This document shows, one piece after another, positions 2 to 59,966 of a stretch of DNA of 62,000 bases. The notes below the pieces were generated by a model that was not told where the DNA came from, searched no databases, and saw only the letters and a list, made by a program, of their open reading frames with translations. The position numbers and the translations under genes are program-made. The stretch is from contig OX597826.1 in NCBI GenBank assembly GCA_951406725.2, positions 60,160,001 through 60,222,000 of the forward strand, read 5' to 3'. The DNA is from Octopus vulgaris (Eukaryota). Position 1 is the first letter of the stretch; every line of letters starts with the position of its first letter.

Positions 2-230
2 ATCCCATAGAAACTCAACAAATTGTTAAAAGATGGAGAAGGGATGTTAAAATTTGAAAATAATTTTAATGCAGGCACACGATCGTTCCGAACAGCAATA
101 GTAACATGTAAATAACATGGTAGAACAATTAAAATTAGTCAAATTAAATTGCATTACAAATCACTGTTCTTCTCAGTGCAAGACGAATTATATGATGATG
201 ATGATGATAATAATAATAATAATAATAAGG

Positions 231-282
<52 letters not shown>

Positions 283-547
283 TAATAATAATAATAATAA
301 TAATAATGATAAAAAATAATAATAATAATAATAATAATAATATTTTATGATGTATTCGTCTTGCGCTGAGAAGAATAGTAATTTGTAATTAATTTGATTC
401 ACTTTAATTAAGTTTAATTATTTTACCATGTTAATTACATGTTTAATATCACTGTTCGAAACGATCGTGAGCTTTTTAAAAATTATTTCCAAATTTTAAC
501 ATCTTCTCTTCTGCATCTTTAAATAATTTGTTGAGTTTCTATGGGAT
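2..547. mobile_element. Foldback/MITE-like element: long imperfect inverted arms (~2-140 and ~410-547) around an (ATG)n/(AAT)n tract; left end cut by the window edge
   Basis: atcccatagaaactcaacaaatt... at 2 is the reverse complement of ...aatttgttgagtttctatgggat ending at 547; similarity continues through cacgatcgtt.cgaacag and aacatggta. Confidence 0.7.
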
Positions 548-2559: not shown

Positions 2560-3775
2560 GTTGCTAATATTGGTGATGTCGATGAAAACAATGTTGCTGT
2601 TGTTCTTTATAACGATGTTGCTAATGTTGGTGATGTTGATGAAAACGATGTTGTTAGTATTCTTTATAACGATGTTGCTAATATTGGTGATGTCGATGAA
2701 AACTCTGTTGCTGTTGTTCTTTATAATGATGTTGCTAATTTTGGTGATGCTGATGAAAACGATATTGCTGGTATTCTTTAAAACGATGTTGCTAATATTG
2801 GTGATGTCGATGAAAACGCTGTTGCTGTTGTTCTTTATAACGATGCTGCTAATGTTGGTGATGTCGATGAAAACGATGTTACTGACGTTTTTAAAACGAT
2901 GTTGCTAATGTTGGTGATGTTGATGAAAACGATGTTGCTGGTATTCTTTATAACGATGTTGCTAATGTTGATAATGTTGATGAAAACGATGTTACTGACG
3001 TTTTTAAAACGATGTTGCTAATGTTGGTAATGTTGATGAAAACAATGTTGCTGGTATTCTTTATAACGATGTTGCTAATGTTGATAATGTTGATGAAAAC
3101 GATGTTACTGACGTTTTTAAAACGATGTTGCTAATGTTGGTGATGTTGATGAAAACGATGTTGCTGGTATTCTTTATAACGATGTTGCTAATGTTGATAA
3201 TGTTGATGAAAACGATGTTACTGACGTTTTAAAACGATGTTGCTAATGTTGGTGATGCTGATGAAAACAATGTTGCTGGTATTCTTTATAACGATGTTGC
3301 TAATGTTGATAATGTTGATGAAAACGATGTTACTGACGTTTTTAAAACAATGTTGCTAATGTTTGTGATGTTGATGAAATCGATGTCGCTGGTATTCTTT
3401 AAAACGATGTTGGTAATGCTGATAATGTTGATGAAAACGATGTTACTGACGTTTTTAAAACGATGTTGCTAATGTTGGTGATGTTGATGAAAACGATGTT
3501 GCTCTTGTTCTTTATAACGATGTTGCTAATATTGGTGATATCGATGAAAACGCTGTTGCTGTTGTTCTTTATAATGATGTTGCTAATTTTGGTGATGCTG
3601 AGGAAAACGCTGTTCTGGTATTTTTTAAAACGATGTTGCTGTTGTTCTTTATAATGATGTTGCTAATATTGGTGATGCTGATGAAAACAATGTTGCTGGT
3701 ATTCTTTAAAACGATGTTGTTAATTTTGTTGATGTTGAAGAGAACGATGTTGCTCTTGTTCTTTATAATGATGTT
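2560..3775. repeat. Minisatellite of ~57-bp units (gatgttgctaatgttggtgatgttgatgaaaacgatgttgctggtattctttataac), alternating with 56-bp variant units in the centre
   Basis: About 20 tandem units; the central block alternates ...ggtattctttataac and ...actgacgtttttaaaac endings. Confidence 0.95.
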
Positions 3776-5384: not shown

Positions 5385-5388
<4 letters not shown>

Positions 5389-5583
5389 GTTAGCTACTGC
5401 ACGCATTTTTTTTCTCTCCTTCTTTCTGTGTTTTTCTCTCTCTGTGTATCTTTCTGTTGAAGAGCGTAGGCTCGAAACGTTAAAGACTTGTTTTATTTAT
5501 ATTTCCTGAGCGCCATACTAATACAATTGTTCGTTTGTTTTCCACCTGCCTTCGTCTTTTGTTTATTTTCATAAAGCTTCCCG

Positions 5584-5584
<1 letters not shown>
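5385..5584 (+). mobile_element. Short non-coding element with hammerhead-like motif (family G1), (TA)n on both sides
   Basis: tcttt-ctgttga-a-gagc-gtag-gctc-gaaac-gtt-aaaga at 5449-5486; nearly identical to 39378-39545. Confidence 0.7.
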
Positions 5585-5680
<96 letters not shown>

Positions 5681-6913: not shown

Positions 6914-7074
6914 GGCCCAGGCCTGGGTGTGCGGAAAGAAGCCTGATTCCCAAACACATGGCTCAGGGTTCAGTCCCACTGCGTGGCATCTTTGGCAAGT
7001 GTCTTCTACTATAGCCTCGGGCCGACCAGGGCCTTGTGAATAGATTTGGTAGACGGAAACAGAAAGAATCACGT

Positions 7075-7105
<31 letters not shown>

Positions 7106-7358
7106 GCATGTATATATCCATATACATATATATATATATACATATATATGTGTGTGCTTGTGTTTGTGTTTGACCACCACCATTGCTTAACAAACGATGT
7201 TGGTGTGTTTACGTCCCCGTAATTTAGAGGTTCGGTAAAAGTGACCGGTAATATATGTAACAGACTTACAAAAAATAAGCCCAGTGATCGATTTGTTCGA
7301 CTAAGAGGAAGTGCTCCAGCATGGCCACAGTCAAAATGAGTGAAACAGGTGAAAAAAC
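6914..7358 (+). mobile_element. SINE family B, full length (tRNA-like head, CORE-like ttggcaagtgtcttct, internal microsatellite)
   Basis: gggttcagtcccactgcgtggcatctttggcaagtgtcttctactatagcc; 3' ccagcatggccacagtcaaaatgagtgaaac. Confidence 0.85.
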
Positions 7359-7999: not shown

Positions 8000-8182
8000 A
8001 AAGGAGTACGACCTGAGATTTTTACTCCGCCCTCAGTGCTCAGTTGGTACGTATTTTGTCGAACTGAGAATGATGAAAGACATAGTCGCCCTCGGCGGTA
8101 TTTCATCACGGAAGGTAAAGCGGACGAAATGCCCTTGTGCGTTTTGTTTGGCGTGCTAACGACTATACCAGCTGGCCGTTTT
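8000..8182 (-). mobile_element. SINE family A, degenerate copy
   Basis: cagttggtacgtattttgtcga...gatgaaagacatagtcgccctcggcgg...gctaacgactataccagctggccg is a diverged reverse complement of the family A head and body. Confidence 0.65.
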
Positions 8183-8191
8183 AATAATAGC

Positions 8192-8292
<101 letters not shown>

Positions 8293-8296
8293 TAAA

Positions 8297-8820
8297 TGCC
8301 CTGATGTAGCACCAGGCAGTGGTTCTCGTGGCTTCTGATCTCAACTGATTGGAAGTGTTATCATGTACATTGTTGTGTCTTGGTATAAAAGATGGGCTAC
8401 AGCAAATATTCTGCTCAATACCACAGATTTGCTTATCAGTTGCTTGACTTTAACCAGTTGAGCATGTCCCTTAGTGGCTGACGATATGTGCATCTCTGAT
8501 CACGAGCATCATAGCCATGTGTTGAGAGGGATTCTTTGGGGTTTGAATAATTCACCTCTGAAAACGTGGGTAGTTCGTTCAACATCCTTAAACAACCTTT
8601 TGAGCGGGATGGGCTACTCGACCAGAAGAAAATTCTAACTGGGCCCCACTTGCAAGGTCATGTGCTGTTTATCTTGACATGAGATCACCATGTCGCGCAC
8701 ATATGGTTGTGATGCATGTGCCTAGTGTACCCTTATCAGACGGGTAGTTATGATGGTTTTACTGGGCTTCGTATATTTTACCCCAGTGTCACTTTGATGG
8801 CATTCACTGCTCTCTCACTC
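8297..8820 (+). mobile_element. ~520-bp non-coding interspersed element (family F), (AAT)n on both sides
   Basis: Colinear with the reverse complement of 57218-57798, from tgccctgatg to ctctctcactc. Confidence 0.85.
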
Positions 8821-8890
<70 letters not shown>

Positions 8891-13137: not shown

Positions 13138-13356
13138 AAGTTAATCCAAACAAGAAAGCACAAAAAAAACACTACAACGCAAGGACGTGGAACACATATA
13201 GCATTATTGGACGCTCAGGAATGAAGGAAAGAAGGAGGGTTTAACGTTTCGAGCGGAGCTCTTCGTCGGAAACATAGGAGAAGGAAAGATCCAGAGAAGG
13301 GAAGACAGAGGATAAAAAATCACCAACGGTACACACGAGGTCACATTTTGAAAAAA
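13138..13356 (-). mobile_element. Hammerhead-motif element, family G2, between (TA)n tracts
   Basis: Minus strand gttt-ccgacga-a-gagc-tcc-gctc-gaaac-gtt-aaac (13273-13239), followed by the family-shared ttcctgagcg. Confidence 0.7.
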
Positions 13357-13499: not shown

Positions 13500-14714
13500 G
13501 GATGTGTATGTGTGTGTGTTCTCCAACGTTCACTAGTGAACGATTGAGGAAATTGGGTCGCTCCCTCACATCCCTATCCATATTATAATTCCCTAGTATA
13601 TGGGGGAAACGAAAAATGAACGTCCTAATCATAGACATCACAAACGTGGTGAAATCGTGCCTCGATGTTGTTTTCGATATGTGTTGTGCACTGATAGTCT
13701 CTTCCAAACTGAAATCAGATGGAATTTCTTATGGAAGTGCAATTCCTATAAATCACTAGAAATGAAACAAGTCTTGTACACCGAAGCTGGTGCGGGGCGA
13801 AAGGCCTTGGGTATGGTAAGGAAGTACTGAATCGCAGCTACCCTGATGTATGTATAACAGTGAGGGTACAAATTTATGTGCAAGCTGCGCAGAAAATAAC
13901 CCAGTTAAGATGTATTTATATGAATATTAGAATCATTAAGTAACAGAACTTTGACAAGTATCTCATTTCCCATTGGCATTACAGATAAAGGTATGTAAAT
14001 AATTGTAAAAAGAGGATACAATTATATACACGGCATACACAGACGTCTCTCTCTTTCTATCTCTCTCTCTCTGTATATATATATATATATATATATATAG
14101 ATGAGAAAGTTGGTTTGTGAAAGCACGTGGTTGAATATATAGAATATATAGAATATATAGAAAATAGTAAAAAGTGAAAAAACTACAGAAGGTCATTTCT
14201 TCTAAACTATGTCATTATAAGAAAGGAAAAAAAAAATTATAACATTCTTCAGACATATTGACTCAAATATATATTTTTTAACCTTTTAAAACAAGCCTTC
14301 TGTAGTTTTTTCACTTTTTACTATTTTCTATAAATATATATATATACACATATTTGCGTATGTATTGGGAGACGGGGATCCCTGTGTATGCATATATTTT
14401 CCAACTACCTGTCTTGTTTTTCACAATGTGTTGTTCTTATTCCCTCACAGTTCATCGCTTGTGTATGTTTCCGTTACCGTCCTTTACGGGCTTTGCTAAT
14501 GTTCGTACACTTGTCCCAGAAGGATTGGCTGTAGGTATTACTAGAACGAATAATACTATCGATAAACACGAGAAATCATGAAGAATTTTGGGTGATAATT
14601 GATGGTGCCTCATGTGAAAGGTTTCAGAGTATTCCTTTATTTGATCTTCTGTACATTGTTTCTTTTTTTACTATTACTGTATATATAAATATTTAAATAT
14701 ATTTCAAATTCTAA

Positions 14715-14900
14715 CAACATGTGAATTGTTGACTAAGTTTTTCCCTACTTCTTCATTTTCTATTCGACTTTCCTCTCTCTCTCCTCTTTCTGAAGAAGAG
14801 CATTGCTCGAAAGGAAAAACCACCTTTCTTTCCTTCCCTGATCGTCTGCTAATATTTTACATGTACCACGTACTCATGTCGTTGTTTTTTTTGTGTTTGT
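14715..14900 (+). mobile_element. Family G2 element, degenerate hammerhead motif
   Basis: ctgaaga-a-gagc-att-gctc-gaaag at 14790-14813, then accacctttctttccttccctgatcgtc as in the 31322 copy. Confidence 0.6.
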
Positions 14901-15272
14901 TCTTGTTTTTTTTTTCTTGAGGGTGGGATTTACTATATGTGTGTGTGTCTGTGTGTGGATCATATTGCTTTACAATTTTTACAAATCTTTATATTTATTT
15001 CAGATACACTTTCATATAAGTACGGTAAGCCGAGTTCACAGCACTTTTTATTCTTTGTATGAATGAAGGGTCCCTGTTGGCAATGAAAATGAATGAATTG
15101 TCATCATCGTCAACATTGTTTCATTTTTGTTTTCGTGGTTCTTGTCGTTCTTTTTCGTCTTCTTCGTTTTCTTCTTTTCGTCTTCCTCCACGTCCTCCAC
15201 GCCCCCCTTCATTTTCTCATTATCATTATTCTTATTACTTCTACTACTACTCACATTTCAATTGTTGACAGA

Positions 15273-19848: not shown

Positions 19849-20080
19849 GGCGGCGAGCTGGCAGAAACGTTAGCACGCCGGGCGAAATGCTTAGCGGTAT
19901 TTCGTATGCCGCTAGGTTCTGAGTTCAAATTCCGCCGAGTTCAACTTTGCCTTTCATCCTTTCGGGGTCGATAAATTAAGTAACAGTTACGCACTGGGGT
20001 CGATATAATCGACTTAATCCGTGTGTTTGTTCTTGTTTGTCCTCTCTGTGTTTAGCCCCTTGTGGGTAGTAAAGAAATGG
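19849..20080 (+). mobile_element. SINE family A, full length, with a 21-bp target-site duplication (1 mismatch)
   Basis: tRNA-like head ggcggcgagctggcagaa...gagttcaaattccgcc; flanks gttaagtatcttgctct(g/a)taa at 19828-19848 and 20081-20101. Confidence 0.92.
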
Positions 20081-20560: not shown

Positions 20561-21152
20561 TGTTATGTTACTATTAAACAAACTTTGCAGCAATTCGTTA
20601 AATAATGACGTACTGACCATAAAATTAAACGATGTCCGTTGATATCACAGTTCCTGATAAGCTCAAATTGTCCCTAAATGTTACTACATATCATTATTGT
20701 TAAATCTAAGCTTGCTTGCTTAGGTTTGACAATTTTTACATTATTGTTTACATAAAATTTTGGGAAGATCTGCAATTTTAAAAATATATAAAGAGTATGA
20801 TTAAATACCGATTTTTCATACCTCGTATGAGTAATTATTAACAGATAACTAAATGTCAACATTTTAAAATTTAAGAAGCATTTATTAGCATACTTAGAAA
20901 TGCGTAAGTGATGCGAAGAATATAATGCTAACTAATATTAAATAGTTTTATTTTATTTCTGATGACAGAATTCAAAATATGTGTGGTGATGAAATATGGC
21001 CGTAATACTGTTTTAGTAAACGTAGTCGAAAATATTCCATGGTACATTCGAATATATCGATTTCACTATTTATTCTATTTTCCTTCCGAACGATGAATGT
21101 CAAAATGAACCCGGTTGAGATTTCAAATGAGAAGGCTGTTTAACCAATATTT

Positions 21153-21382
21153 ATTTCTTTATTGCCCACAGGGGGCTAAACATAGACGGGACAAAGAAGG
21201 ACAGACAAACGGATTAAGTCGATTTTATCGACCCCAGTGCGTAACTGGTACTTAATTTATCGACCCCGAAAGGATGAAAGGCAAAGTCGACCTCGGCGGA
21301 ATTTGAACTCAGAACGTAACGACAAACGAAATACGGCTACGCATTTCGCCCGGGGTGCTAACGTTTCTGCCAGCTCGCCGCC
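21153..21382 (-). mobile_element. SINE family A, full length
   Basis: Reverse complement aligns end to end with 19849-20078 (roughly 90% by eye). Confidence 0.92.
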
Positions 21383-25740: not shown

Positions 25741-26304
25741 TGCCTTCTGATGCTGTTCCCAAAGACCCAACAATGACTGGTATTATCTTCACCTTCTTCA
25801 ATCTCCATAGCCGGGCTATTTCGTACTTAAAAGGGTTGTATTTATCTTTTCGCCTTCTTTCTTGACTATTCGTGGGTCAATAAGGGGTGCAACATCAACT
25901 ATATAGCATATGTGACGTATCTTGTCGACCATCACTAGATCCGGTTGCTTATGCTCTAGCACCTGATCTGTTTGGACTGCGAATTCCCAGAGGATGTTGC
26001 TAGTCTCTGACTTCGTCACACACTGCGCTTTCTACTCATGCTACGCCTTGCCTCTCTCTAGTCCCCAGTTTCCCCACAGTTTCCAATGTAGCACCTTCCC
26101 TACCTGATCATGTCTCCACAACTTGTAGAGGTTTGGAGCAAGTCTAGAACATTCGTTCGTAATATGGTCAATGTTTTCATCCACTATATTTCACGTGTGG
26201 CACAACGGAGAAACTTGCTCTTTCTTAAGTTTGACCCTGCAATTCATGACCAAAGTTTGGCCTTGCGCTGCCAGTATAGTACTCCCGGTATCTTTATTTT
26301 AGTG
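25741..26304 (-). pseudogene. R4/Dong-type non-LTR retrotransposon remnant: CCHC zinc knuckle plus restriction-like endonuclease, with stops and frameshifts
   Basis: Manual translation KDTGSTILAAQGQTL...CHT*...HITNEC...RHDQVGKVLHWKL...ILWEFAVQTDQVLEHKQPDLVMVDK...EK/YNPFKYEIARLWRLKKVKIIPVIVGSLG. Confidence 0.85.
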
Positions 26305-26362
26305 TTCCTATTATTACTATTATTATTATTATTGTTATTATTATTATTATTGTTGTTATTAA

Positions 26363-26416
<54 letters not shown>

Positions 26417-26465
26417 GATTACGACTATTATTATTATTATTATTAGTAGTAGTCAGTATTAGAAC

Positions 26466-26538
<73 letters not shown>
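26305..26538. repeat. (TTA)n/(TAG)n microsatellite between the two R4/Dong fragments
   Basis: Direct reading. Confidence 0.95.

Positions 26539-26899: not shown

Positions 26900-26906
<7 letters not shown>
26539..26906 (-). pseudogene. 5'-truncated R4/Dong-type retrotransposon 3' end: RLE C-terminus, stop and ~90-nt 3' UTR ending in (AAT)n
   Basis: KKCFLIDVSIPADDNVSLKEMEKLSKYKDLEIEVTRMWNLKTETIPIIVGALGMIKK...IQKIALLGTAH in ORF 26630..27298. Confidence 0.9.
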
Positions 26907-26978
<72 letters not shown>

Positions 26979-27061
26979 TGTAGTAGTAGTAGTAGTAGTA
27001 GTAGTAGTATTACGACTATTATTATTATTATTAGTAGTAGTAATAGTCGTAGTATTAGAAC

Positions 27062-27104
<43 letters not shown>

Positions 27105-27216
27105 AATAATAATAACATCATTATTGTTATTATTATTATTACTACTATTATTATTATTATTATTATTATTAATAATAATAATAATAATAATAATATCATT
27201 ATTATTGTTATTGTTA

Positions 27217-27250
<34 letters not shown>

Positions 27251-27316
27251 CATTATTATTATTTTTATTATTATTATTATTACAATTATAATTATCATTA
27301 TAATTATTATTATTAA

Positions 27317-27398
<82 letters not shown>
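26907..27398. repeat. Long compound (TTA)n/(TAG)n/(AAT)n array
   Basis: Direct reading. Confidence 0.95.
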
Positions 27399-30592: not shown

Positions 30593-31009
30593 CTTTCTTT
30601 TTCCTTTTCTTTTTTACTTGTTTCAGTCATTTGACTGCGGCCATGCTAGAGCACCGCCTTTAGTCGAGCAAATTTCCCCCCGGGACTTATTCTTTGTAAG
30701 CCCAGTGCTTATTCTATCGGTCTCTTTTTGCCGAACCGCTAAGTGACGGGGACGTAAACACACCAGCATCGGTTGTCAAGCAATGCTAGGGGGACAAACA
30801 CAGACACACAAACATAACCACACATACATATATATATACATATATACGACAGGCTTCTTTCAGTTTCCGTCTACCAAATCCACTCACAAGGCATTGGTCG
30901 GCCCGGGGCTATAGCAGAAGACACTTGCCCAAGATGCCACGCAGTGGGACTGAACCCGGAACCATGTGGTTGGTTAGCAAGCTACTTACCACACAGCCAC
31001 TCCTGCGCC
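30593..31009 (-). mobile_element. SINE family B, full length and well preserved
   Basis: Minus strand ggcgcaggagtggctgtgtggtaag...gggttcagtccc...cttgggcaagtgtcttc...gcatggccgcagtcaaatgactgaaacaagtaaaa. Confidence 0.92.
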
Positions 31010-31321: not shown

Positions 31322-31516
31322 TAAATGTAACCACATGTGAATCGCTGGTGATTTTCTTCCTTCGTCTTCGGTTCTTTTGGACTTTCCACTATTTCTGAAG
31401 AAGAGCTTTGCTCGAAACGTTAAAACCATCTTTCTTTCCTTCCCTGAGCGTCTTCTAACACATTACGTGTACCACGATCACGGGTTGCTGTTCCTTTTCA
31501 TGTCAATTCTTCTTTT

Positions 31517-31520
<4 letters not shown>
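31322..31520 (+). mobile_element. Family G2 element with the best-preserved hammerhead motif, long (TA)n on both sides
   Basis: ttt-ctgaaga-a-gagc-ttt-gctc-gaaac-gtt-aaa at 31392-31424. Confidence 0.75.
31392..31424 (+). ncRNA. Minimal type I hammerhead ribozyme-like motif
   Basis: CUGAAGA core, GAGC/GCUC stem II, GAAA, ACGU stem III, GUU cleavage triplet, UUU/AAA stem I; activity untested. Confidence 0.5.
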
Positions 31521-31600
<80 letters not shown>

Positions 31601-31659
31601 GCGTATTTAAGTGTATATAAACTGAGAAAGGTTTATTTATATATATATATATATATACA

Positions 31660-31830
31660 TATAGTGAGAATTTATAGAAAGAAACAAAAGATGAAGACGG
31701 GTGTGTAAACAACGAACAAATGTCTTTGTTTAACGCTCGGTGAGAAAATCTTTTACGTTCCTAGCCTGCGCTCTTCGACAGAAAGAAACAGAATTAAACA
31801 GGGAGAGAAAATAAACATAAATGTTTAGTG
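31660..31830 (-). mobile_element. Family G1 element, degenerate
   Basis: Minus strand tcttt-ctgtcga-a-gagc-gcag-gcta-ggaac-gta-aaaga; gaagacgggtgtgtaaac corresponds to the G1 tail. Confidence 0.6.
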
Positions 31831-31914
31831 GCTAGGGATTTATCATGCCAAATGCCAGACATAGGGATCACACAGGAGAGCAACGAAGAAGGGGAACTTA
31901 TAAAGTAGTGGTGA

Positions 31915-32092
31915 TCCCAAAACTACAAGATGCAGGAGGAAAGCATGAGAAAAAGTTATGGCGAGAGAGTCAGCAGAAGTTTGTCATTACCTTCTGCCAG
32001 TGCCGCGTGGCGCTTAAGTGTTTCGCCCATAAAACCGAGATCCTTCGACCGCGAGTCTGCTGCTCTAACCATTAGGCCATGTGCCTCCACTA
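31915..32092 (-). mobile_element. SINE family E, 5' part
   Basis: caagatgcaggag...gagagagtcagcagaagt...ttaccttctgcc is shared with 55041-55318; tRNA-like ctctaaccattaggccatgtgcc end. Confidence 0.75.
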
Positions 32093-32200
32093 TTAAAAAT
32101 GTATACATAATTGAATATCAATTGTCGTGATTAATAATAATTTCACGTATATTTCATCTAATGTCTCTTATTTTATCTAATGTCTTTTATTCACCACTCA

Positions 32201-33289: not shown

Positions 33290-34155
<866 letters not shown>

Positions 34156-39182: not shown

Positions 39183-39377
39183 TGCATGCGTGTATATGCG
39201 TGAAATCACTTGCATACATGTATACATGGACATGATATCACATAATGATGGTCGATTAATATTTTCAATATCCTAAGTTATTTGCAATAAATGTGGTTGC
39301 TCCAATCTTAGTTAACCGCGCTTAAAATGTGTACCATAAGTATGAAAACCCTTAAACCCCTGCGTATATATATATAT

Positions 39378-39543
39378 ATTTTCTCTCCTTCTTTCTGTGT
39401 TTTTCTCTCTCTGTGTATCTTTCTGTTGAAGAGCGTAGGCTCGAAACGTTAAAGACTTGTTTTATTTATATTTCCTGAGCGCCATACTAATACAATTGTT
39501 CGTTTGTTTTCCACCTGTCTTCGTCTTTTGTTTATTTTCATAA

Positions 39544-39545
<2 letters not shown>
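39378..39545 (+). mobile_element. Family G1 hammerhead-motif element in (TA)n
   Basis: One visible mismatch versus 5410-5575 over ~165 bp. Confidence 0.75.
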
Positions 39546-39584
<39 letters not shown>

Positions 39585-42545: not shown

Positions 42546-42639
<94 letters not shown>

Positions 42640-42641
<2 letters not shown>

Positions 42642-42821
42642 AGATCGTTAGCTACTACACACATTCTTTTCTCTCCTTGTTTTTTTCTGTGTACCTTTCT
42701 GTAGAAGAGCGTAGGCTCGAAACGTAAAATACTTTTTCTATTCCTGAGCGCTATACTAATACATCTGTTAGTTTGTACACCACCTGCCTTCGTCTTGTGT
42801 TTATTTTCTTAAACTTACCTT

Positions 42822-42822
<1 letters not shown>
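42640..42822 (+). mobile_element. Family G1 hammerhead-motif element between long (TA)n tracts
   Basis: gttagctact start as at 5387; ttt-ctgtaga-a-gagc-gtag-gctc-gaaac-gta-aaa at 42696-42729. Confidence 0.75.
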
Positions 42823-42862
<40 letters not shown>

Positions 42863-45736: not shown

Positions 45737-45802
<66 letters not shown>

Positions 45803-45963
45803 GACGGGCTTCTTTCAGTTTCCGTCTAACAAATCCACTCACAAGGCTTTGGTCGGCCCGAGGCTATAGTAGAAGACACTTGCACGAGATGCCACACAGT
45901 GGTTCTAAATGCGGAACCACGTGGTGGGTAAGCAAGCTACTTATCTCACAGCCACTCCTACGT
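45531..45963 (-). mobile_element. SINE family B, full length
   Basis: Colinear with 30593-31009; internal (CA)n(TA)n. Confidence 0.9.
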
Positions 45964-49484: not shown

Positions 49485-49715
49485 GGCGGCGAGCTGGCAG
49501 AATCGTTAGCACGCCGGGCGAAATGCTTAGCAGTATTTCGTCTGCCGTTACGTTCTGAGTTCAAATTCCGCCGAGGTCGACTTTGCCTTTCATCCTTTCC
49601 GGGTCGATAAATTAAGTACCAGTTACGCACTGGGGTCGATGTAATCTACTTAATCCGTTTGTCTGTCCTTGTTTGTCCTCTCTGTGTTTAGCCCCTTGTG
49701 GGTAGTAAAGAAATA
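49485..49715 (+). mobile_element. SINE family A, full length, with an 18-bp target-site duplication
   Basis: tatataatataaaaatag at 49461-49478 and 49716-49733. Confidence 0.92.
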
Positions 49716-50592
49716 TATATAATATAAAAATAGATGCATGAATTTATCAAGTACACACTGTGTGTTTGGTTTAACGAAATAATATAATGTTATTTAATTC
49801 ATATTATATATTGATAAAATCAGGAAAAATGATAGTCGTCGTATTTCAAAACTTAGACATGCTGTGGAATAACTAAAGACAATTTTGTAATCAGCGTCCA
49901 AAATAGATTTAAGAAAAGGCTAAATTGAAGAAAAAGAAAATTATCATGTTAACCAGCGTAGTTTATTGAATTTCTCAAATAAATTAAATACTTGTTAAAA
50001 ATCTTCTTAAAACTTAGTAATATTTCAAAATATTTGTACAATCTACGATGTGGTTAAGCAGCAAATTGGCTAAAAAGCAAAGAAAATATTTTCTGAAGAT
50101 ATTGCAAAATTTTTCTAATGTTCATTTATCAGTAACAGGTGCACCGGTTGCTGGTTAGATGTCGACAATTAACTTCAGCAATTTCTCCTCTTTCTTTCTA
50201 TTTGGTATGTTAACTAAAAATATTTTGAGTTTTTATTCTTTTAAGCTTTTTGTTTCTTTTTACCGTTCTTTGTTCTTCTTAGCATGATTTGTTTTGTTTT
50301 CTAAATAACAGAAAAGCAACTTGGTAAATTATTCTAATTCCTAAAATCAACAAATATTCGCACAGGAAATGATATACAACCGTTTCTACATACGTGTGTA
50401 GCAAAAGGCATACACCTATGTACATGTGTGTGCGAGTGTCTGTCAGCCTGTGTACTTTATGTTAGCAATTTTTGAATGCGTAATTTTTTTTTATAATCGT
50501 GAGTGCTCGAGTGAGTGTGGGCATACCTGCAGCGTAACACTTCATGTGCGCGTGCGTATGAATACATACAAACATACATATATATATATATA

Positions 50593-53089: not shown

Positions 53090-53500
53090 GCAGGTATGGC
53101 TGTGTTGTGAGAAGCTTATTTCTTAACCACATGGTTCTGGGTTCAGTCCCTCTGCGGGATACTTTGGGAAAGTATCTTCTACTATAACCTCAGACCTACC
53201 TAATCTTGGAGTATATTTGATAGACAGTAACAGAAAGAAGCCCGCCGTATACATATATATGTATATATCTATGTGTAAGTGTCCTTGAGTCTGTGTTTGT
53301 AACCCATCATCACTTGACAACCGGTGTGTTGGTGTAGTTACGCCCCATACTTTGGTGGTTCGGCAAAAGTACCGATGGTATAAGTACCAGGCTTTAAAAA
53401 GAAAAGCAAGTCCTGGAGTCGATTTATTCGACTAAAACCCTTCAAGGCGGTGACCCAGCATGGCCGCTATCAAATGACTGAAGCAAGTAAGGGTAAAAGA
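53090..53500 (+). mobile_element. SINE family B, full length, diverged; an A-type fragment follows (~53505-53640)
   Basis: cacatggttctgggttcagtccc...cttgacaaccgg...ccagcatggccgctatcaaatgactgaagcaag. Confidence 0.8.
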
Positions 53501-55040: not shown

Positions 55041-55318
55041 GTTTGTTCCTTCTAGAGCCATGCCTGGCTCATAAGGGCTGATTTCCCGGTTTCCTTGGCG
55101 TATACGTTCCCCACCTGGACGGGACGCCGGTCTGTCACAGTTGAGCTCCAAGATGCAGGAGAAAAGAGTGAGAGAAAGTTGTGGCGAGAGAGTCAGCAGA
55201 AGTTCGCCATTACCTTCTGCCGGAGCCGCGTGGAGCTTAGGTGTTTCGCTCATAAACAGACACATCGCCTGGTCTGAGATTTGAACCTATGATCCCTCTA
55301 AGCACTAGGCCATGTGGT
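55041..55318 (-). mobile_element. SINE family E, near full length
   Basis: tRNA-like head catggcctagtg...ggttcaaatctcagacc; 3' cggcgtcccgtccaggtggggaacgtatacgccaaggaaaccggg. Confidence 0.75.
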
Positions 55319-55319
55319 A

Positions 55320-55376
<57 letters not shown>

Positions 55377-55775: not shown

Positions 55776-56100
55776 CTCTTTTTACTTCTTTCAGTCATTT
55801 TGACTGCGGCCATGTTGGTGCACCGCATTTAATCGAGCAACTCGAACCCGGGACTTATTCTATCGGTTGTCAAGCAATGCTAGGGGGACAAACACAGACA
55901 CACAAACATACACGCACATGCATATATATATACATATATACGACGAGATTCTTTCAGTTTCCGTCTACCAAATCCACTCACAAGGATTTGTTCGGCCCGA
56001 GGCTATAGTAGAAGACACTTGCCCAAGGTGCCACGCAGTGGGACTGAACCCGGAACCATGTGGTTGGTAAACAACCTACTTACCACACAGCCACTCCTAT
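55776..56100 (-). mobile_element. SINE family B with internal deletions
   Basis: Colinear with 30593-31009 but reads gggacttattctatcggttgtcaag where the full copy has ~75 more bases. Confidence 0.85.
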
Positions 56101-57178: not shown

Positions 57179-57217
<39 letters not shown>

Positions 57218-57798
57218 GAGTGAGAGAGCAGTTCATGCCATCAAAGTGACACTGGGGTAAAATATAAGAAGCCCAATATACCCATCATGACTACCCGTCT
57301 GATAAGGGTACACCAGGCACATGCATCACAACCATATGTGTGCGATATGGTGATCTCATATCAAGATAAACAGCGCATGACCTTGCAGGTGGGGCCAGTT
57401 AGAATTTTCTTGAGGTTGAGTAGCCCATCCCGCTCAAAAGGTCCCTGAATAAGGGTTATTTAAGGATATTGAAAGAACCACCCATGTTTCCAGAGGTGAA
57501 TTATTCAAACCCCAAAGAATCCCTCTCAACACATAGCTATGATGCTCCCCCACTACTTCTGCGCGTGATCAGAGATGCACATATCGTCAGCCACTAAGGA
57601 ACATGCTCAACTGGTTAAGGTCAAACAACTGACAAGCAAATCTGTGGTATTGAGCAGAATATTTGCTGTAGCCCACCTTTTATACCAAGACAAAACAATG
57701 TACATGATAACACTTCCAATCAGTTAAGATCAGAAGCCATGAGAGCCACTGCCTGGTACTGCATCAGGGCATCCACTGCCTGGTACTGCATCAGGGCA
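57218..57798 (-). mobile_element. Family F element, (TTA)n on both sides, with a 26-bp tandem duplication at one end
   Basis: Reverse complement of 8297-8820; ccactgcctggtactgcatcagggca at 57746-57771 and 57773-57798. Confidence 0.85.
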
Positions 57799-58137: not shown

Positions 58138-59741
58138 CATATATGTATATATATATATATATATATATTATATATCTATATATATATGGAGAGAGAGAGA
58201 TAGAGAGAGAGGGGGAGAGAGATAGCTATACGTATATATTATATATATACATGAAATACATGTATGTATATACCTATAAATTTATGTACATGATATATAT
58301 ATATATATTTATGTGTGTGTATGGGTGTGTATGTATATTGTATACCGATATTATATATACACCGAAATACAGAAATCTAATCCAACGTTGATGAAGTTGT
58401 TATGTACGAATTGAAGAAAAGAAACCCACCAACCGTTTCAGAAATATTGACATTCAGTGAGATTGTTGCCGCGCAGAAATTTATGAATTTGACAGTGCAT
58501 CTAATTAAATCAATCAGAATCTGTTTTGTCCCAAGGCACGGTCACTAATGAAGTATTCCATTGCTAGTTATTTGAGAATGTCCGATTTAAAAATTAATAC
58601 TAGTTTTAACTAATGTCTCATATTGTATGAAGGGATAGAATTTCTGATAACAGTTCAATACTGAATCTATCGGATTTGCGGAGAAGTGTTATGATGGCCT
58701 GTGTAGCTATATTCATCCATGTGAAAGGTCATATTAGTGTTCAATAAGTTCCGTTGCCGTGATGAGTTGTGGAGTCAAATGTTCCTAACCTTACCCTTCA
58801 TCTTGGAGTGAAGAAGCGAGAGAGAGAGAGTGTAATGTTATCATATCCTGTGCTGCTTGACAAGTAAATGACGAATGACCGAAGTTGAAGGAGTGTTCGT
58901 GTTGGTGGTGGGACGTGATGTGAGACGAGATTAGGCAATAGTGAATAAAGTTGTACAGGAAGGTTTGGAAGTAAGATAAAACTAATGATGAGGAAACTAA
59001 GAATTGGAGGAATAAATAAGAGTAATATTGTATCGTATGCAGGGCATCATGGACAGGTAGATTTTATTATTACCTTACATGGAGCAATACGTTGCGTTTG
59101 AAAGAGTTTTCGGAAGAGCTAAGTAGAATCTAGTTTTACATCTTACGCTATGTTTGGGACCCCATTCCACACCAACATAAAACTATTGGCTGATATTGCG
59201 TAGTGAAAGCTGTAACAAGAAATCAGAGACTAAATTTTCAATCTGAAAACAATTTCCACGGTTTTCTAACCTCAATTTTCGGTACTGACTAGGAAGGGCA
59301 TGGATAGAATCATTTTACTTCAGCTCGGTTCGCATAAAATATGCAAGAGGTCCACTTCAAAATAAAGAGACTGATGGTACAAATAAAGATTGTTTGAGTC
59401 ATGGAAATACTTACAACACATGCAATTAGAAGAGTTATTTATGTATAACAATCACTATACAAGGATATCTGAAGTAAGAAACACAATCTTTGTAGGTTAA
59501 GATGTATTACTTAATGAAGTCGTTACATGCTCAATCTGGATTTACGTGCTTGATATCATCATTACTTTTGTAACTGTTTAACCCCAGATCGCATCTATGA
59601 ATGATAATCTCCATGATAAAATCTCTTCTAATCCCGATCTCCTCTTCCTTTTTATTATTTTTTTGTTGTTGTTCGCGCAGCATTTATCAGATGCTTTATA
59701 TTCCAGTGTAAGTTAAGGCACTAACTGTAGTCATTACGGTA

Positions 59742-59966
59742 TACTCTTACTCTCTTTACTCTTTTACTTGTTTCAGTCATTTGACTGCGGCCATGCTGGA
59801 GCACCGCCTTTAGTCGAGCAAATCGACCCCCGGGACTTATTCTTTGTAAGCCCAGTACTTATTCTATCGGTCTCTTTTGCCGAACCGCTAAGTGATGGGG
59901 ACGTAAACACACCAGCATCGGTTGTCAAGTAATTCTAGGGGGGCAAAAACACAGACACAAACACAC
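59742..59966 (-). mobile_element. SINE family B, 5'-truncated copy with a tandem tactct tail
   Basis: Close match to 30605-30810. Confidence 0.88.

What the first reader, a model, noticed from the sequence alone, without database searches (positions are those of the whole stretch)
31322..31520. Candidate retrozyme-like family: ~200-bp elements with a minimal, probably dimer-dependent hammerhead
Seen: seven copies (5385, 13138, 14715, 31322, 31660, 39378, 42640) in two subfamilies share stemI-CYG(A/U)NGA-A-GAGC-loop-GCUC-GAAAC-GU(U/A)-stemI', usually followed by cctgagcg, with no ORF. Stem III is a loopless ACGU palindrome that cannot fold in a monomer. Established: minimal hammerheads with palindromic stem III occur in Penelope-like elements and metazoan non-LTR retrozymes and act as dimers; an extra A between A9 and G10.1 is known from a viroid hammerhead. 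Inference: a non-autonomous ribozyme retroelement that could yield small circular RNAs. I cannot tell whether it is already described.
Basis: partly seen in the sequence, partly recalled or inferred. Interest (0 to 1): 0.8.

Follow-up and report, generated by a model that had tools for sequence, protein, structure and literature searches.

The report
Penelope-type minimal hammerhead repeats, mostly decayed
The window holds seven old, scattered copies of a roughly 200-base non-coding repeat carrying the stripped-down hammerhead ribozyme motif already known from Penelope-like retrotransposons, so it is a new example of a known kind and shows no sign of being an active circular-RNA element.

Summary
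There are exactly seven copies in two subfamilies: A at 31322, 14703 and 13140(-), and B at 5385, 39374, 42637 and 31655(-). They share a 35-nt block that reads helix I, CYG(A/U)NGA, an extra A, GAGC-loop-GCUC, GAAAC, GUH, helix I'. This block is far better conserved than the rest of the unit (0.82 against 0.48 identity).

That includes the loopless ACGU helix III, the extra base after A9, the G10.1-C11.1 pair and the short helix I. An unrelated repeat family in metazoan-type metagenome contigs carries the same block in the same architecture.

The retrozyme and circular-RNA reading is not supported here. No two copies are in tandem. Only one copy (31395-31421) has a canonical catalytic core. 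All four B copies carry U at the essential position A6. There is no significant covariation within the window, no Rfam hit, and no reverse transcriptase or GIY-YIG gene nearby.

The units have fixed 5' ends and sit inside (TA)n tracts, which fits short non-autonomous passengers of Penelope machinery. Verdict: a new member of a known kind, of modest interest.

The parts
31322..31520 (+). Unit A1 (199 bp), the focal copy. It is flanked by (TA)n on both sides.
31392..31424 (+). Minimal hammerhead of A1, the only copy with a canonical core. Helix I 5' strand UUU 31392-94; C3-A9 CUGAAGA 31395-31401; extra A 31402; stem II GAGC 31403-06, loop UUU 31407-09, GCUC 31410-13; G12 A13 A14 31414-16; palindromic helix III ACGU 31417-20; U17 31421. 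Predicted cut between 31421 and 31422. Helix I 3' strand AAA 31422-24.
31443..31450 (+). Conserved CCUGAGCG box of A1. It is complementary to the 3' strand of stem II plus G12, so it can form an alternative helix. Function unknown.
14703..14909 (+). Unit A2 (207 bp). Hammerhead block about 14790-14815 with an intact CUGAAGA box, but GAAAGGA in place of GAAACGU, so helix III and the cleavage site are destroyed.
13140..13352 (-). Unit A3 (213 bp). Block at 13243-13269 with core CCGACGA (U4C) and a 4-bp helix I.
5385..5592 (+). Unit B1 (208 bp). Block at 5454-5481 with core CUGUUGA (A6U) and a 5-bp helix I UCUUU/AAAGA.
39374..39548 (+). Unit B2 (175 bp, 5'-truncated by about 35 nt). Block at 39423-39450, identical to B1. 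B2 is 94% identical to B1 overall.
42637..42826 (+). Unit B3 (190 bp). Block at 42699-42726 with core CUGUAGA (A6U), H17 = A and a 3-bp helix I.
31655..31846 (-). Unit B4 (192 bp). Block at 31754-31781 with core CUGUCGA (A6U) plus C11.1A and A13G. It lies tail-to-tail with A1 across one (TA)n tract.

Best explanation
These are seven old, solitary insertions of a short (about 190-213 bp), non-coding, pyrimidine-rich retroposon family with two subfamilies. Its conserved heart is the minimal, helix-III-less hammerhead typical of Penelope-like elements (PLEs).

Most likely mechanism, which is inferred: source copies are transcribed by Pol II or by read-through, and the RT/GIY-YIG protein of an autonomous PLE elsewhere in the genome copies the RNA in trans into AT-rich or (TA)n DNA. 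The hammerhead block is kept in the source lineage because it serves that cycle. It could act as a weak ribozyme that works only when two copies meet. In that case the ACGU palindromes pair into a 4-bp shared helix III, helix I forms by domain swap, and the cut falls after GUH. Alternatively the block could be a structured recognition element.

The copies in this window are dead relics. They are monomers, so the ribozyme cannot assemble in cis, and six of seven carry changes at core positions.

Shown: the copies, their boundaries, the motif, the conservation pattern, the (TA)n association, and the absence of tandems and of coding partners in the window. Inferred: PLE dependence, any cleavage, and the transcription mode.
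For: 1. Motif match. The block fits the published min-HHR definition point by point (paper; sequence). A review states that all available PLE sequences carry such minimal HHRs lacking helix III.
2. Conservation. The block has 0.82 mean pairwise identity against 0.48 for the rest of the unit (0 of 20,000 permutations as high). A-versus-B identity is about 0.55 overall but 0.76-0.88 in the block (0.74 for A1-B4).
3. Pattern of variation. All 6 hammerhead-free positions (N7, loop 2, H17) vary, against 6 of 28 constrained ones (Fisher P = 7e-4).
4. Independent recurrence. A scan for only GAAGAGC-N3-4-GCTCGAAACGT gave more than 120 metagenome contigs. In 71 of 120, C(C/U)GAN sits in register upstream although the search did not require it, H17 is never G, and a 3-bp helix I of different sequence is present. 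Across families, helix I covaries: pair 2.2-1.2 is CG 18, UA 6; pair 2.3-1.3 is GC 19, UA 7; covariation score 0.143 against 0.089 shuffled, 0 of 500. Those contigs encode metazoan-type proteins.
5. Discrete units. The 5' ends agree within 0-8 nt in 6 of 7 copies, and one copy is 5'-truncated. This is the signature of a retroposon in the sense orientation of the ribozyme.
6. Target. 5 of 7 units have (TA)>=5 within 15 bp of both ends, against 1.8% of random 200-bp intervals. PLE endonucleases prefer AT-rich DNA and PLEs show a microsatellite bias.
7. PLEs are abundant and old in coleoid cephalopods, if the window is from an octopus as I believe.
Against: - No PLE ORF is in the window or next to the related motifs in the metagenome contigs, so PLE dependence rests on the motif alone.
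- Within the window the helices are supported by invariance, not covariation: 1 compensatory pair, with 167 of 500 shuffles as good.
- The B subfamily spread with U at A6. By classical hammerhead mutagenesis, as I recall it, that should nearly abolish cleavage.
- The one canonical-core copy has a helix I of only three A-U pairs.
- Nearest-neighbour energies disfavour the double hammerhead: A1 -1.9 against -14.8 kcal/mol for the best dimer, and B1 -14.9 against -28.0.
- No Rfam family matches.
- (TA)n covers 5.8% of the window and also forms tails of the local SINEs. LINE-type mobilisation through a TA-rich tail would give the same flanks.
Confidence: 0.6

Rival explanations
1. The copies are not an independent family. 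They are simply 5'-truncated 3' ends, or solo pseudo-LTR pieces, of an autonomous Penelope-like element whose body lies elsewhere in the genome.
For: PLE insertions are typically heavily 5'-truncated, and the HHR lies in the pLTR. Cervera & de la Peña judged most dispersed single min-HHRs to be 'probably related to truncated PLEs'. One copy (B2) is 5'-truncated.
Against: Random truncation should scatter the 5' ends. Here 3 of 3 A copies and 3 of 4 B copies start within 0-8 nt of one another, and homology stops there. No longer fragment exists among the seven.
Confidence: 0.2
2. The family is an active retrozyme-like element whose tandem copies self-cleave as dimers, circularise to circles of about 200 nt, and are reverse-transcribed. 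The window merely shows its monomeric offspring.
For: Non-LTR retrozyme families have dispersed monomer derivatives and are related to PLE pLTRs. The hammerhead lies in the middle of the unit. That is what a single round of reverse transcription on a circular template, from a fixed start, would give (inference). B1 and B2 are 94% identical, so some activity was relatively recent.
Against: - There are no tandems in 62 kb despite 7 copies.
- The motif is of the minimal PLE type, which cleaves poorly even as a dimer in vitro, not the canonical type I of retrozymes.
- 6 of 7 cores are non-canonical, and the youngest copies (B1, B2) carry A6U.
- The unit RNA is not unusually stable (z = -1.45), unlike the compact circles of retrozymes.
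Confidence: 0.1
3. The family is a Pol III SINE. The conserved GCTCGAAAC is a B-box-like internal promoter, and the likeness to a hammerhead is coincidental.
For: GGCTCGAAACG resembles the B-box consensus GGTTCGANNCC, and TAGCTAC in the B head loosely resembles the start of an A box (my reading). The units are SINE-sized with fixed 5' ends. Schistosome Sm-alpha SINEs combine a Pol III promoter with a hammerhead.
Against: - ARAGORN finds no tRNA-like sequence.
- Every copy has one or more T>=4 runs (up to T8) between its 5' end and the block, which should terminate Pol III.
- A B box explains 9 conserved bases, but not the conserved UUUCUG..GAAGAGC half, the stem II complementarity, or free variation exactly at N7, loop 2 and H17.
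- It also does not explain the same architecture in unrelated repeats.
Confidence: 0.05

Closest known systems
Minimal hammerhead ribozymes (min-HHR) of metazoan Penelope-like elements (Cervera & de la Peña 2014, PMC4209133; Lünse, Weinberg & Breaker 2017, not readable here)
   Same: Type I topology. No helix III loop, with a palindromic 15.2-16.2, so it is predicted to work only as a dimer. An extra nucleotide between A9 and G10.1. A G10.1-C11.1 pair. A short helix I (3-5 bp) with no loop 1. The motifs are mostly dispersed single copies, are sequence-heterogeneous within a genome, and tolerate core variants.
   Different: Helix II is only 4 bp, against 6-8 bp in the schistosome and Drosophila examples. 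No PLE ORF or pLTR context could be shown. One subfamily carries A6U, a core change I did not find reported. The carrier is a discrete unit of about 200 bp with fixed 5' ends.
Metazoan non-LTR retrozymes and their monomer derivatives (Cervera & de la Peña 2020, PMC7229834; Li, Clavereau & Pollet 2026 preprint, 10.64898/2026.07.22.740005)
   Same: Non-coding, AT-rich units of similar size (consensus lengths 51-972 bp are reported). A type I hammerhead that prefers dimers. Dispersed monomers exist. Proposed to be non-autonomous derivatives of PLE pLTRs.
   Different: Retrozymes are defined by tandem arrays and by canonical, cleavage-competent hammerheads with a helix III hairpin. Neither is present here. 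No circular RNA evidence is available.
Sm-alpha / Sj-alpha SINE-like retroposons of schistosomes
   Same: A short dispersed non-autonomous retroposon carrying a type I hammerhead.
   Different: Sm-alpha has a Pol III promoter and a canonical, active hammerhead. The present units lack a tRNA-like head, contain Pol III terminators upstream of the motif, and have the minimal motif.
Repeat family in metazoan-type metagenome contigs found (for example L021, L026, L062)
   Same: An identical ribozyme backbone, C(C/U)GACGA-A-GAGC-UAAC-GCUC-GAAAC-GUC, with a short helix I. The copies are dispersed without adjacent RT genes. The U4C variant, as in window copy A3, is as common as U4 (32 against 30).
   Different: There is no sequence similarity outside the 30-nt block. 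The helix I sequence differs and H17 = C. Head-to-head inverted pairs occur. The source organism is unknown.

Membership tests
PLE-type minimal hammerhead (min-HHR) | Catalytic boxes CUGANGA and GAAA in type I order | tested here: met
   Met by the focal copy at 31395-31421. Six other copies deviate: U4C in A3, A6U in B1-B4, GAAAGGA in A2, and A13G plus C11.1A in B4.
PLE-type minimal hammerhead (min-HHR) | No helix III loop; positions 15.2-16.2 palindromic (A-CG-U) | tested here: met
   ACGU follows GAA directly in 6 of 7 copies.
PLE-type minimal hammerhead (min-HHR) | One unpaired nucleotide between A9 and G10.1 | tested here: met
   An extra A is present in 7 of 7 copies.
PLE-type minimal hammerhead (min-HHR) | Conserved G10.1-C11.1 pair closing helix II | tested here: met
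   6 of 7 copies. Helix II GAGC/GCUC is 95.8% paired but invariant, so there is no covariation.
PLE-type minimal hammerhead (min-HHR) | Short helix I (about 4-5 bp) flanking the core and cleavage site | tested here: met
   3 bp in A1 and B3, 4 bp in A3, and 5 bp in B1, B2 and B4. Helix I covaries across unrelated families.
PLE-type minimal hammerhead (min-HHR) | Residence in the pseudo-LTR of an element encoding RT plus GIY-YIG endonuclease | tested here: not met
   No RT or GIY-YIG appears among the ORFs and open pieces of the window. The source genome could not be searched. The defining paper notes that most genomic copies are solitary.
PLE-type minimal hammerhead (min-HHR) | Self-cleavage after H17, only when two copies can pair | not testable with these tools
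   This needs transcription assays. Thermodynamic models give the double hammerhead -1.9 kcal/mol (A1) and -14.9 kcal/mol (B1), against better alternatives.
Metazoan non-LTR retrozyme | Two or more units in direct tandem, so that two hammerheads delimit a unit | tested here: not met
   All seven copies are solitary. The nearest neighbours are inverted (A1/B4, A3/A2) or 3-34 kb apart.
Metazoan non-LTR retrozyme | Canonical type I hammerhead with a helix III hairpin (matches Rfam Hammerhead_1) | tested here: not met
   No Rfam hit at gathering score or at E<=10 on single units. A descriptor that allows a helix III hairpin finds only the loopless A1 site.
Metazoan non-LTR retrozyme | Short non-coding AT-rich unit (about 170-400 bp) | tested here: met
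   175-213 bp, 33-42% G+C (T 39-48%), stops in nearly all frames.
Metazoan non-LTR retrozyme | Expressed as unit-length linear and circular RNA | not testable with these tools
   No transcriptome is available. The unit RNA fold has z = -1.45.
tRNA-derived / Pol III SINE with hammerhead (Sm-alpha type) | tRNA-like head with A and B boxes, and a body transcribable by Pol III | tested here: not met
   ARAGORN finds nothing. T4-T8 runs lie upstream of the block in all copies.

The most novel reading that the evidence does not exclude
Subfamily B kept every other hammerhead feature but spread with U at the essential A6. In B1 and B2 this lets the two core strands pair (U4-G16.2, G5-C15.2, U6-A15.1, U7-A14), turning the three-way junction into one continuous hairpin. 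A large unrelated family likewise spreads with C at U4. The most novel reading is therefore that in these lineages the 'ribozyme' is no longer catalytic. It would have been retained as a structured RNA handle, for example for recognition by the Penelope RT or for template dimerisation through the ACGU palindrome. That would make it an ex-ribozyme co-opted as a retrotransposition signal, in an abundant cephalopod-specific non-autonomous PLE family.
Probability: 0.12. Interest if true: 0.5.

Novelty: new member of a known kind. Interest (0 to 1): 0.25.

Why it matters
If the window is from an octopus genome, as its SINEs suggest, this is a previously unremarked and abundant family at about one copy per 9 kb here. 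It would link the expansion of Penelope-like elements in cephalopods to short non-autonomous passengers that carry minimal hammerheads. Repeat annotations probably file such units as 'unclassified SINE' or 'unknown'.

The family offers a natural experiment on whether catalysis by the PLE hammerhead is needed for propagation. One subfamily keeps a canonical core and the other is fixed for A6U. Beyond that, it adds no new principle. The motif, its dependence on dimers, its dispersed solitary copies and its link to PLEs are all published.

Tried and rejected
- Rfam at gathering score on the whole window, at E<=10 on the whole window (swamped by microsatellite and miRNA false hits), and on single units. 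No hammerhead model matched, as expected for a motif without helix III.
- MFE and alignment folding. These recover stem II only and give no significant stability. Folding did suggest an alternative helix between CCUGAGCG and the 3' strand of stem II.
- A search for more copies from the same genome. An element-derived peptide against 5.8 billion proteins found nothing. An exact look-up of a window ORF found nothing. The viral contig scan had 0 hits. I therefore could not test covariation within the family, copy number, tandem arrays or a PLE partner.
- A look for PLE ORFs beside the related motifs in metagenome contigs. I found only host genes (TRIM-NHL, GPCR, bHLH, acyl-CoA-type ligase), a DDE transposase, an AP-endonuclease and a YLDD-type RT fragment (L117), which is not PLE-like.
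- Terminal inverted repeats. None found, so the unit is not a MITE.
- The Pol III SINE idea, rejected because of internal T-runs and the lack of a tRNA-like head.
- Lünse et al. 2017 could not be read, so I could not check whether A6U variants are known.

Full report
**Setting.** The window is AT-rich eukaryotic DNA (26-39% G+C in 2-kb bins), crowded with (TA)n, (TAGA)n, (CA)n and (ATA)n arrays. Perfect (TA)>=5 runs alone cover 5.8% of it. It contains no tRNA gene and nothing that reaches an Rfam gathering score. None of 30 of the most protein-like open pieces has a significant Pfam domain; the only match listed is a sub-threshold DUF7528 (E 0.005, below the curated cut-off). Several copies of a tRNA-related SINE are present, for example at 6960-7080. 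From memory, that sequence matches the abundant octopus SINE, so I believe the window comes from an Octopus genome. This is a recollection, not a test.

**The observation.**
- Subfamily A: 31322-31520(+), 14703-14909(+) and 13140-13352(-), at 64-71% mutual identity.
- Subfamily B: 5385-5592(+), 39374-39548(+), 42637-42826(+) and 31655-31846(-), at 66-88% over the aligned columns. B1 and B2 are 94% identical by blastn.
- A and B are only about 50-56% identical overall.

All seven share a 35-nt block that reads UUU, C(U/C)G(A/U)NGA, A, GAGC, a 3-4 nt loop, GCUC, GAAAC, GU(U/A), AAA. Most also share a second box, CCTGAGCG, 24-35 nt downstream. A descriptor for a loopless hammerhead finds five of the copies with a relaxed core and one with a canonical core. 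It finds none in 100 Markov shuffles of the window. The only correction is that two copies (A2, B4) no longer fit the stated consensus.

**What the block is.** Read as a type I hammerhead, the focal copy assigns as follows.

| Hammerhead position | Window coordinates |
|---|---|
| Helix I 5' strand UUU | 31392-31394 |
| C3-A9 (CUGAAGA) | 31395-31401 |
| Extra A | 31402 |
| Helix II GAGC / loop UUU / GCUC | 31403-31413 |
| G12 A13 A14 | 31414-31416 |
| A15.1 C15.2 G16.2 U16.1 | 31417-31420 |
| U17 | 31421 |
| Helix I 3' strand AAA | 31422-31424 |

Helix III has no loop, so it can only form between two copies. In such a dimer the two ACGU stretches pair, and each core is completed by the cleavage-site strand of the other copy. 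Helix I is therefore domain-swapped (my analysis).

All of this is the published definition of the 'min-HHR' of Penelope-like elements. Cervera & de la Peña designed a descriptor with no helix III or loop 3. They then found, as emergent features:
- a conserved G10.1-C11.1 pair;
- palindromic 15.2-16.2;
- a short helix I;
- thousands of heterogeneous, mostly solitary copies per genome;
- very low cleavage in vitro, even as dimers.

A later review states that all available PLEs carry such minimal motifs.

**Evidence that the block is under hammerhead-like constraint.**
- The block is the conservation peak of the unit, at 0.82 mean pairwise identity against 0.48 elsewhere. None of 20,000 permutations reached that value.
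- Within it, all six positions that a hammerhead leaves free (N7, the loop 2 columns, H17) vary. Only 6 of 28 constrained positions do (Fisher P = 7e-4).
- Within the window the helices never vary, so they show no covariation: one compensatory pair, no better than shuffles.

Outside evidence fills that gap. A scan of metagenome contigs for only the stem II-GAAACGT string returned more than 120 contigs. In 71 of 120, C(C/U)GAN lies in register upstream although the search did not require it. H17 is C, U or A and never G. A 3-bp helix I of a different sequence (U-A, C-G, G-C) flanks the motif. A third family (L118) has yet another complementary helix I.

On a joint alignment, helix I covaries between families: score 0.143 against 0.089 in shuffles (0 of 500), and 0.035-0.103 in the slid controls. 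This counts few independent events, so it is moderate support. Those contigs encode metazoan-type proteins, and their repeats resemble the window family only in the ribozyme block.

**What the units are.**
- Six of seven copies begin within 0-8 nt of a common 5' end: TTCAAAATGTAACC in A and ATGATAGATCGTTAGC in B. One copy lacks about 35 nt at that end, and homology stops there.
- There are no terminal inverted repeats, no coding capacity and no tRNA-like head.
- Every copy has T4-T8 runs upstream of the block. This argues against Pol III and therefore against reading GCTCGAAAC as a B box.
- Five of seven units have (TA)>=5 within 15 bp of both ends, against 1.8% of random 200-bp intervals. A1 and B4 lie tail-to-tail in one tract.

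PLE endonucleases cut AT-rich DNA, and PLE clades show a microsatellite insertion bias, with (TA)n reported for Naiads. The flanks therefore fit PLE-mediated insertion. A TA-tailed, LINE-dependent retroposon would look the same.

No RT or GIY-YIG remnant is in the window. PLEs are reported as abundant and ancient in octopus genomes, with an expansion at a Jukes-Cantor distance of about 0.2. That is broadly in line with the 12-36% divergence among these copies.

**Why the retrozyme / circular RNA reading is not supported.** Non-LTR retrozymes are tandem arrays of units bearing canonical, efficiently cleaving type I hammerheads. The authors explicitly set the minimal PLE variants apart from them. 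Here:
- no two copies are in tandem;
- the motif cannot fold in a monomeric transcript;
- only A1 has a canonical core, and its helix I is three A-U pairs;
- A3 has U4C, A2 has lost C15.2/U16.1, and B4 has three lesions;
- all four B copies carry U at A6, including the youngest pair.

From classical mutagenesis, as I recall it, A6 is essential. In B1 and B2 the U6 and U7 residues let the two core strands pair with each other. The monomer then folds into one continuous hairpin of -10.8 kcal/mol.

Nearest-neighbour energies disfavour the double hammerhead in all cases, and the unit RNA is not unusually stable (z = -1.45). These models ignore tertiary contacts, so they weaken the case but do not exclude cleavage.

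The internal position of the hammerhead, about 70-100 nt from the 5' end, shows that the unit ends are not made by cleavage of a linear RNA. It is compatible with a defined transcription start, or with one round of reverse transcription on a circle. I cannot tell these apart.

**Verdict.** The finding is real, and its structural reading is right. It describes a new family of an already described kind: short, solitary, PLE-type min-HHR-bearing repeats, most likely non-autonomous passengers of Penelope-like elements, present here as decayed relics.

I found no paper describing hammerheads in cephalopods. The family itself may therefore be unreported, although repeat libraries probably hold it under another label.

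The one mildly unusual point is the fixed A6U core of subfamily B. Together with the equally common U4C variant in the metagenome family (32 against 30), it raises the question of whether catalysis matters at all for these elements.

Noticed in passing
window 6919-7111, 30824-31009, 45773-45959, 55906-56098 (also about 53126-53431 and 59717-59929): Multiple copies of a tRNA-related SINE (GGTTCAGTCCCACTGCGTGGCA...GGTAGACGGAAAC...) ending in (TG)n(TA)n tails. From memory it matches the abundant octopus SINE, which suggests the window is from an Octopus genome. The SINE tails may seed many of the (TA)n tracts.
   Followed up: partly
window 31443-31450 and the equivalent position in the other six units: A conserved box CCUGAGCG lies 24-35 nt downstream of the predicted cleavage site. 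It repeats the 5' strand of stem II and can pair with (U/G)GCUCG, forming an alternative helix that would compete with stem II (RNAalifold). Function unknown.
   Followed up: partly
window 5446-5489 and 39415-39458 (B1, B2 ribozyme blocks): The subfamily-specific A6U change, with U7, makes the two core strands complementary (UGUU/AACG). The monomer then folds into one continuous hairpin of -10.8 kcal/mol instead of a three-way junction.
   Followed up: partly
window 31322-31846: Units A1(+) and B4(-), from different subfamilies, lie tail-to-tail across a single interrupted (TA)n tract (31521-31654). This suggests repeated targeting of the same microsatellite.
   Followed up: partly
loci L001-L120 (metagenome contigs, e.g. 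L021, L026, L028, L062): A large repeat family in contigs that encode metazoan proteins carries (G)AUUCGCU-C(C/U)GACGA-A-GAGC-UAAC-GCUC-GAAAC-GUC-AGC. The non-canonical C4 form is as common as U4 (32 against 30) and tracks two sequence subfamilies. Head-to-head inverted pairs meet a few bases upstream of the motif, and many copies appear 5'-truncated just there. The source organism is not identified.
   Followed up: partly
window 2560-3775: A minisatellite of about 19 copies of a 57-bp unit (higher-order periods 113 and 451 bp; 84-91% matches), open in one frame as a repetitive N/D/V-rich peptide.
   Followed up: no
window 8296-8859 vs 57179-57772; 21147-21382 vs 49485-49720 and 19849-20078: Other interspersed repeats at 91-94% identity in inverted orientation (repeat finder). 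They are younger than the hammerhead units and were not classified.
   Followed up: no
window 31923-32118 vs 55146-55352: A further repeat (74% identity) lies immediately upstream of unit B4 but is not associated with any hammerhead unit at its second site, so it is a separate element.
   Followed up: partly
window 25819-26031 (-): An open piece (...ILWEFAVQTDQVLEHKQPDLVMVDK...IVDVA...) that from memory resembles the C-terminal region of invertebrate LINE ORF2 proteins. It has no Pfam hit.
   Followed up: partly
window 207-342, 8182-8295, 26309-26538, 26905-27398, 33290-33603: Long (ATA)n/(TTA)n trinucleotide arrays (38-165 copies) in addition to the (TA)n and (TATC)n tracts.
   Followed up: no
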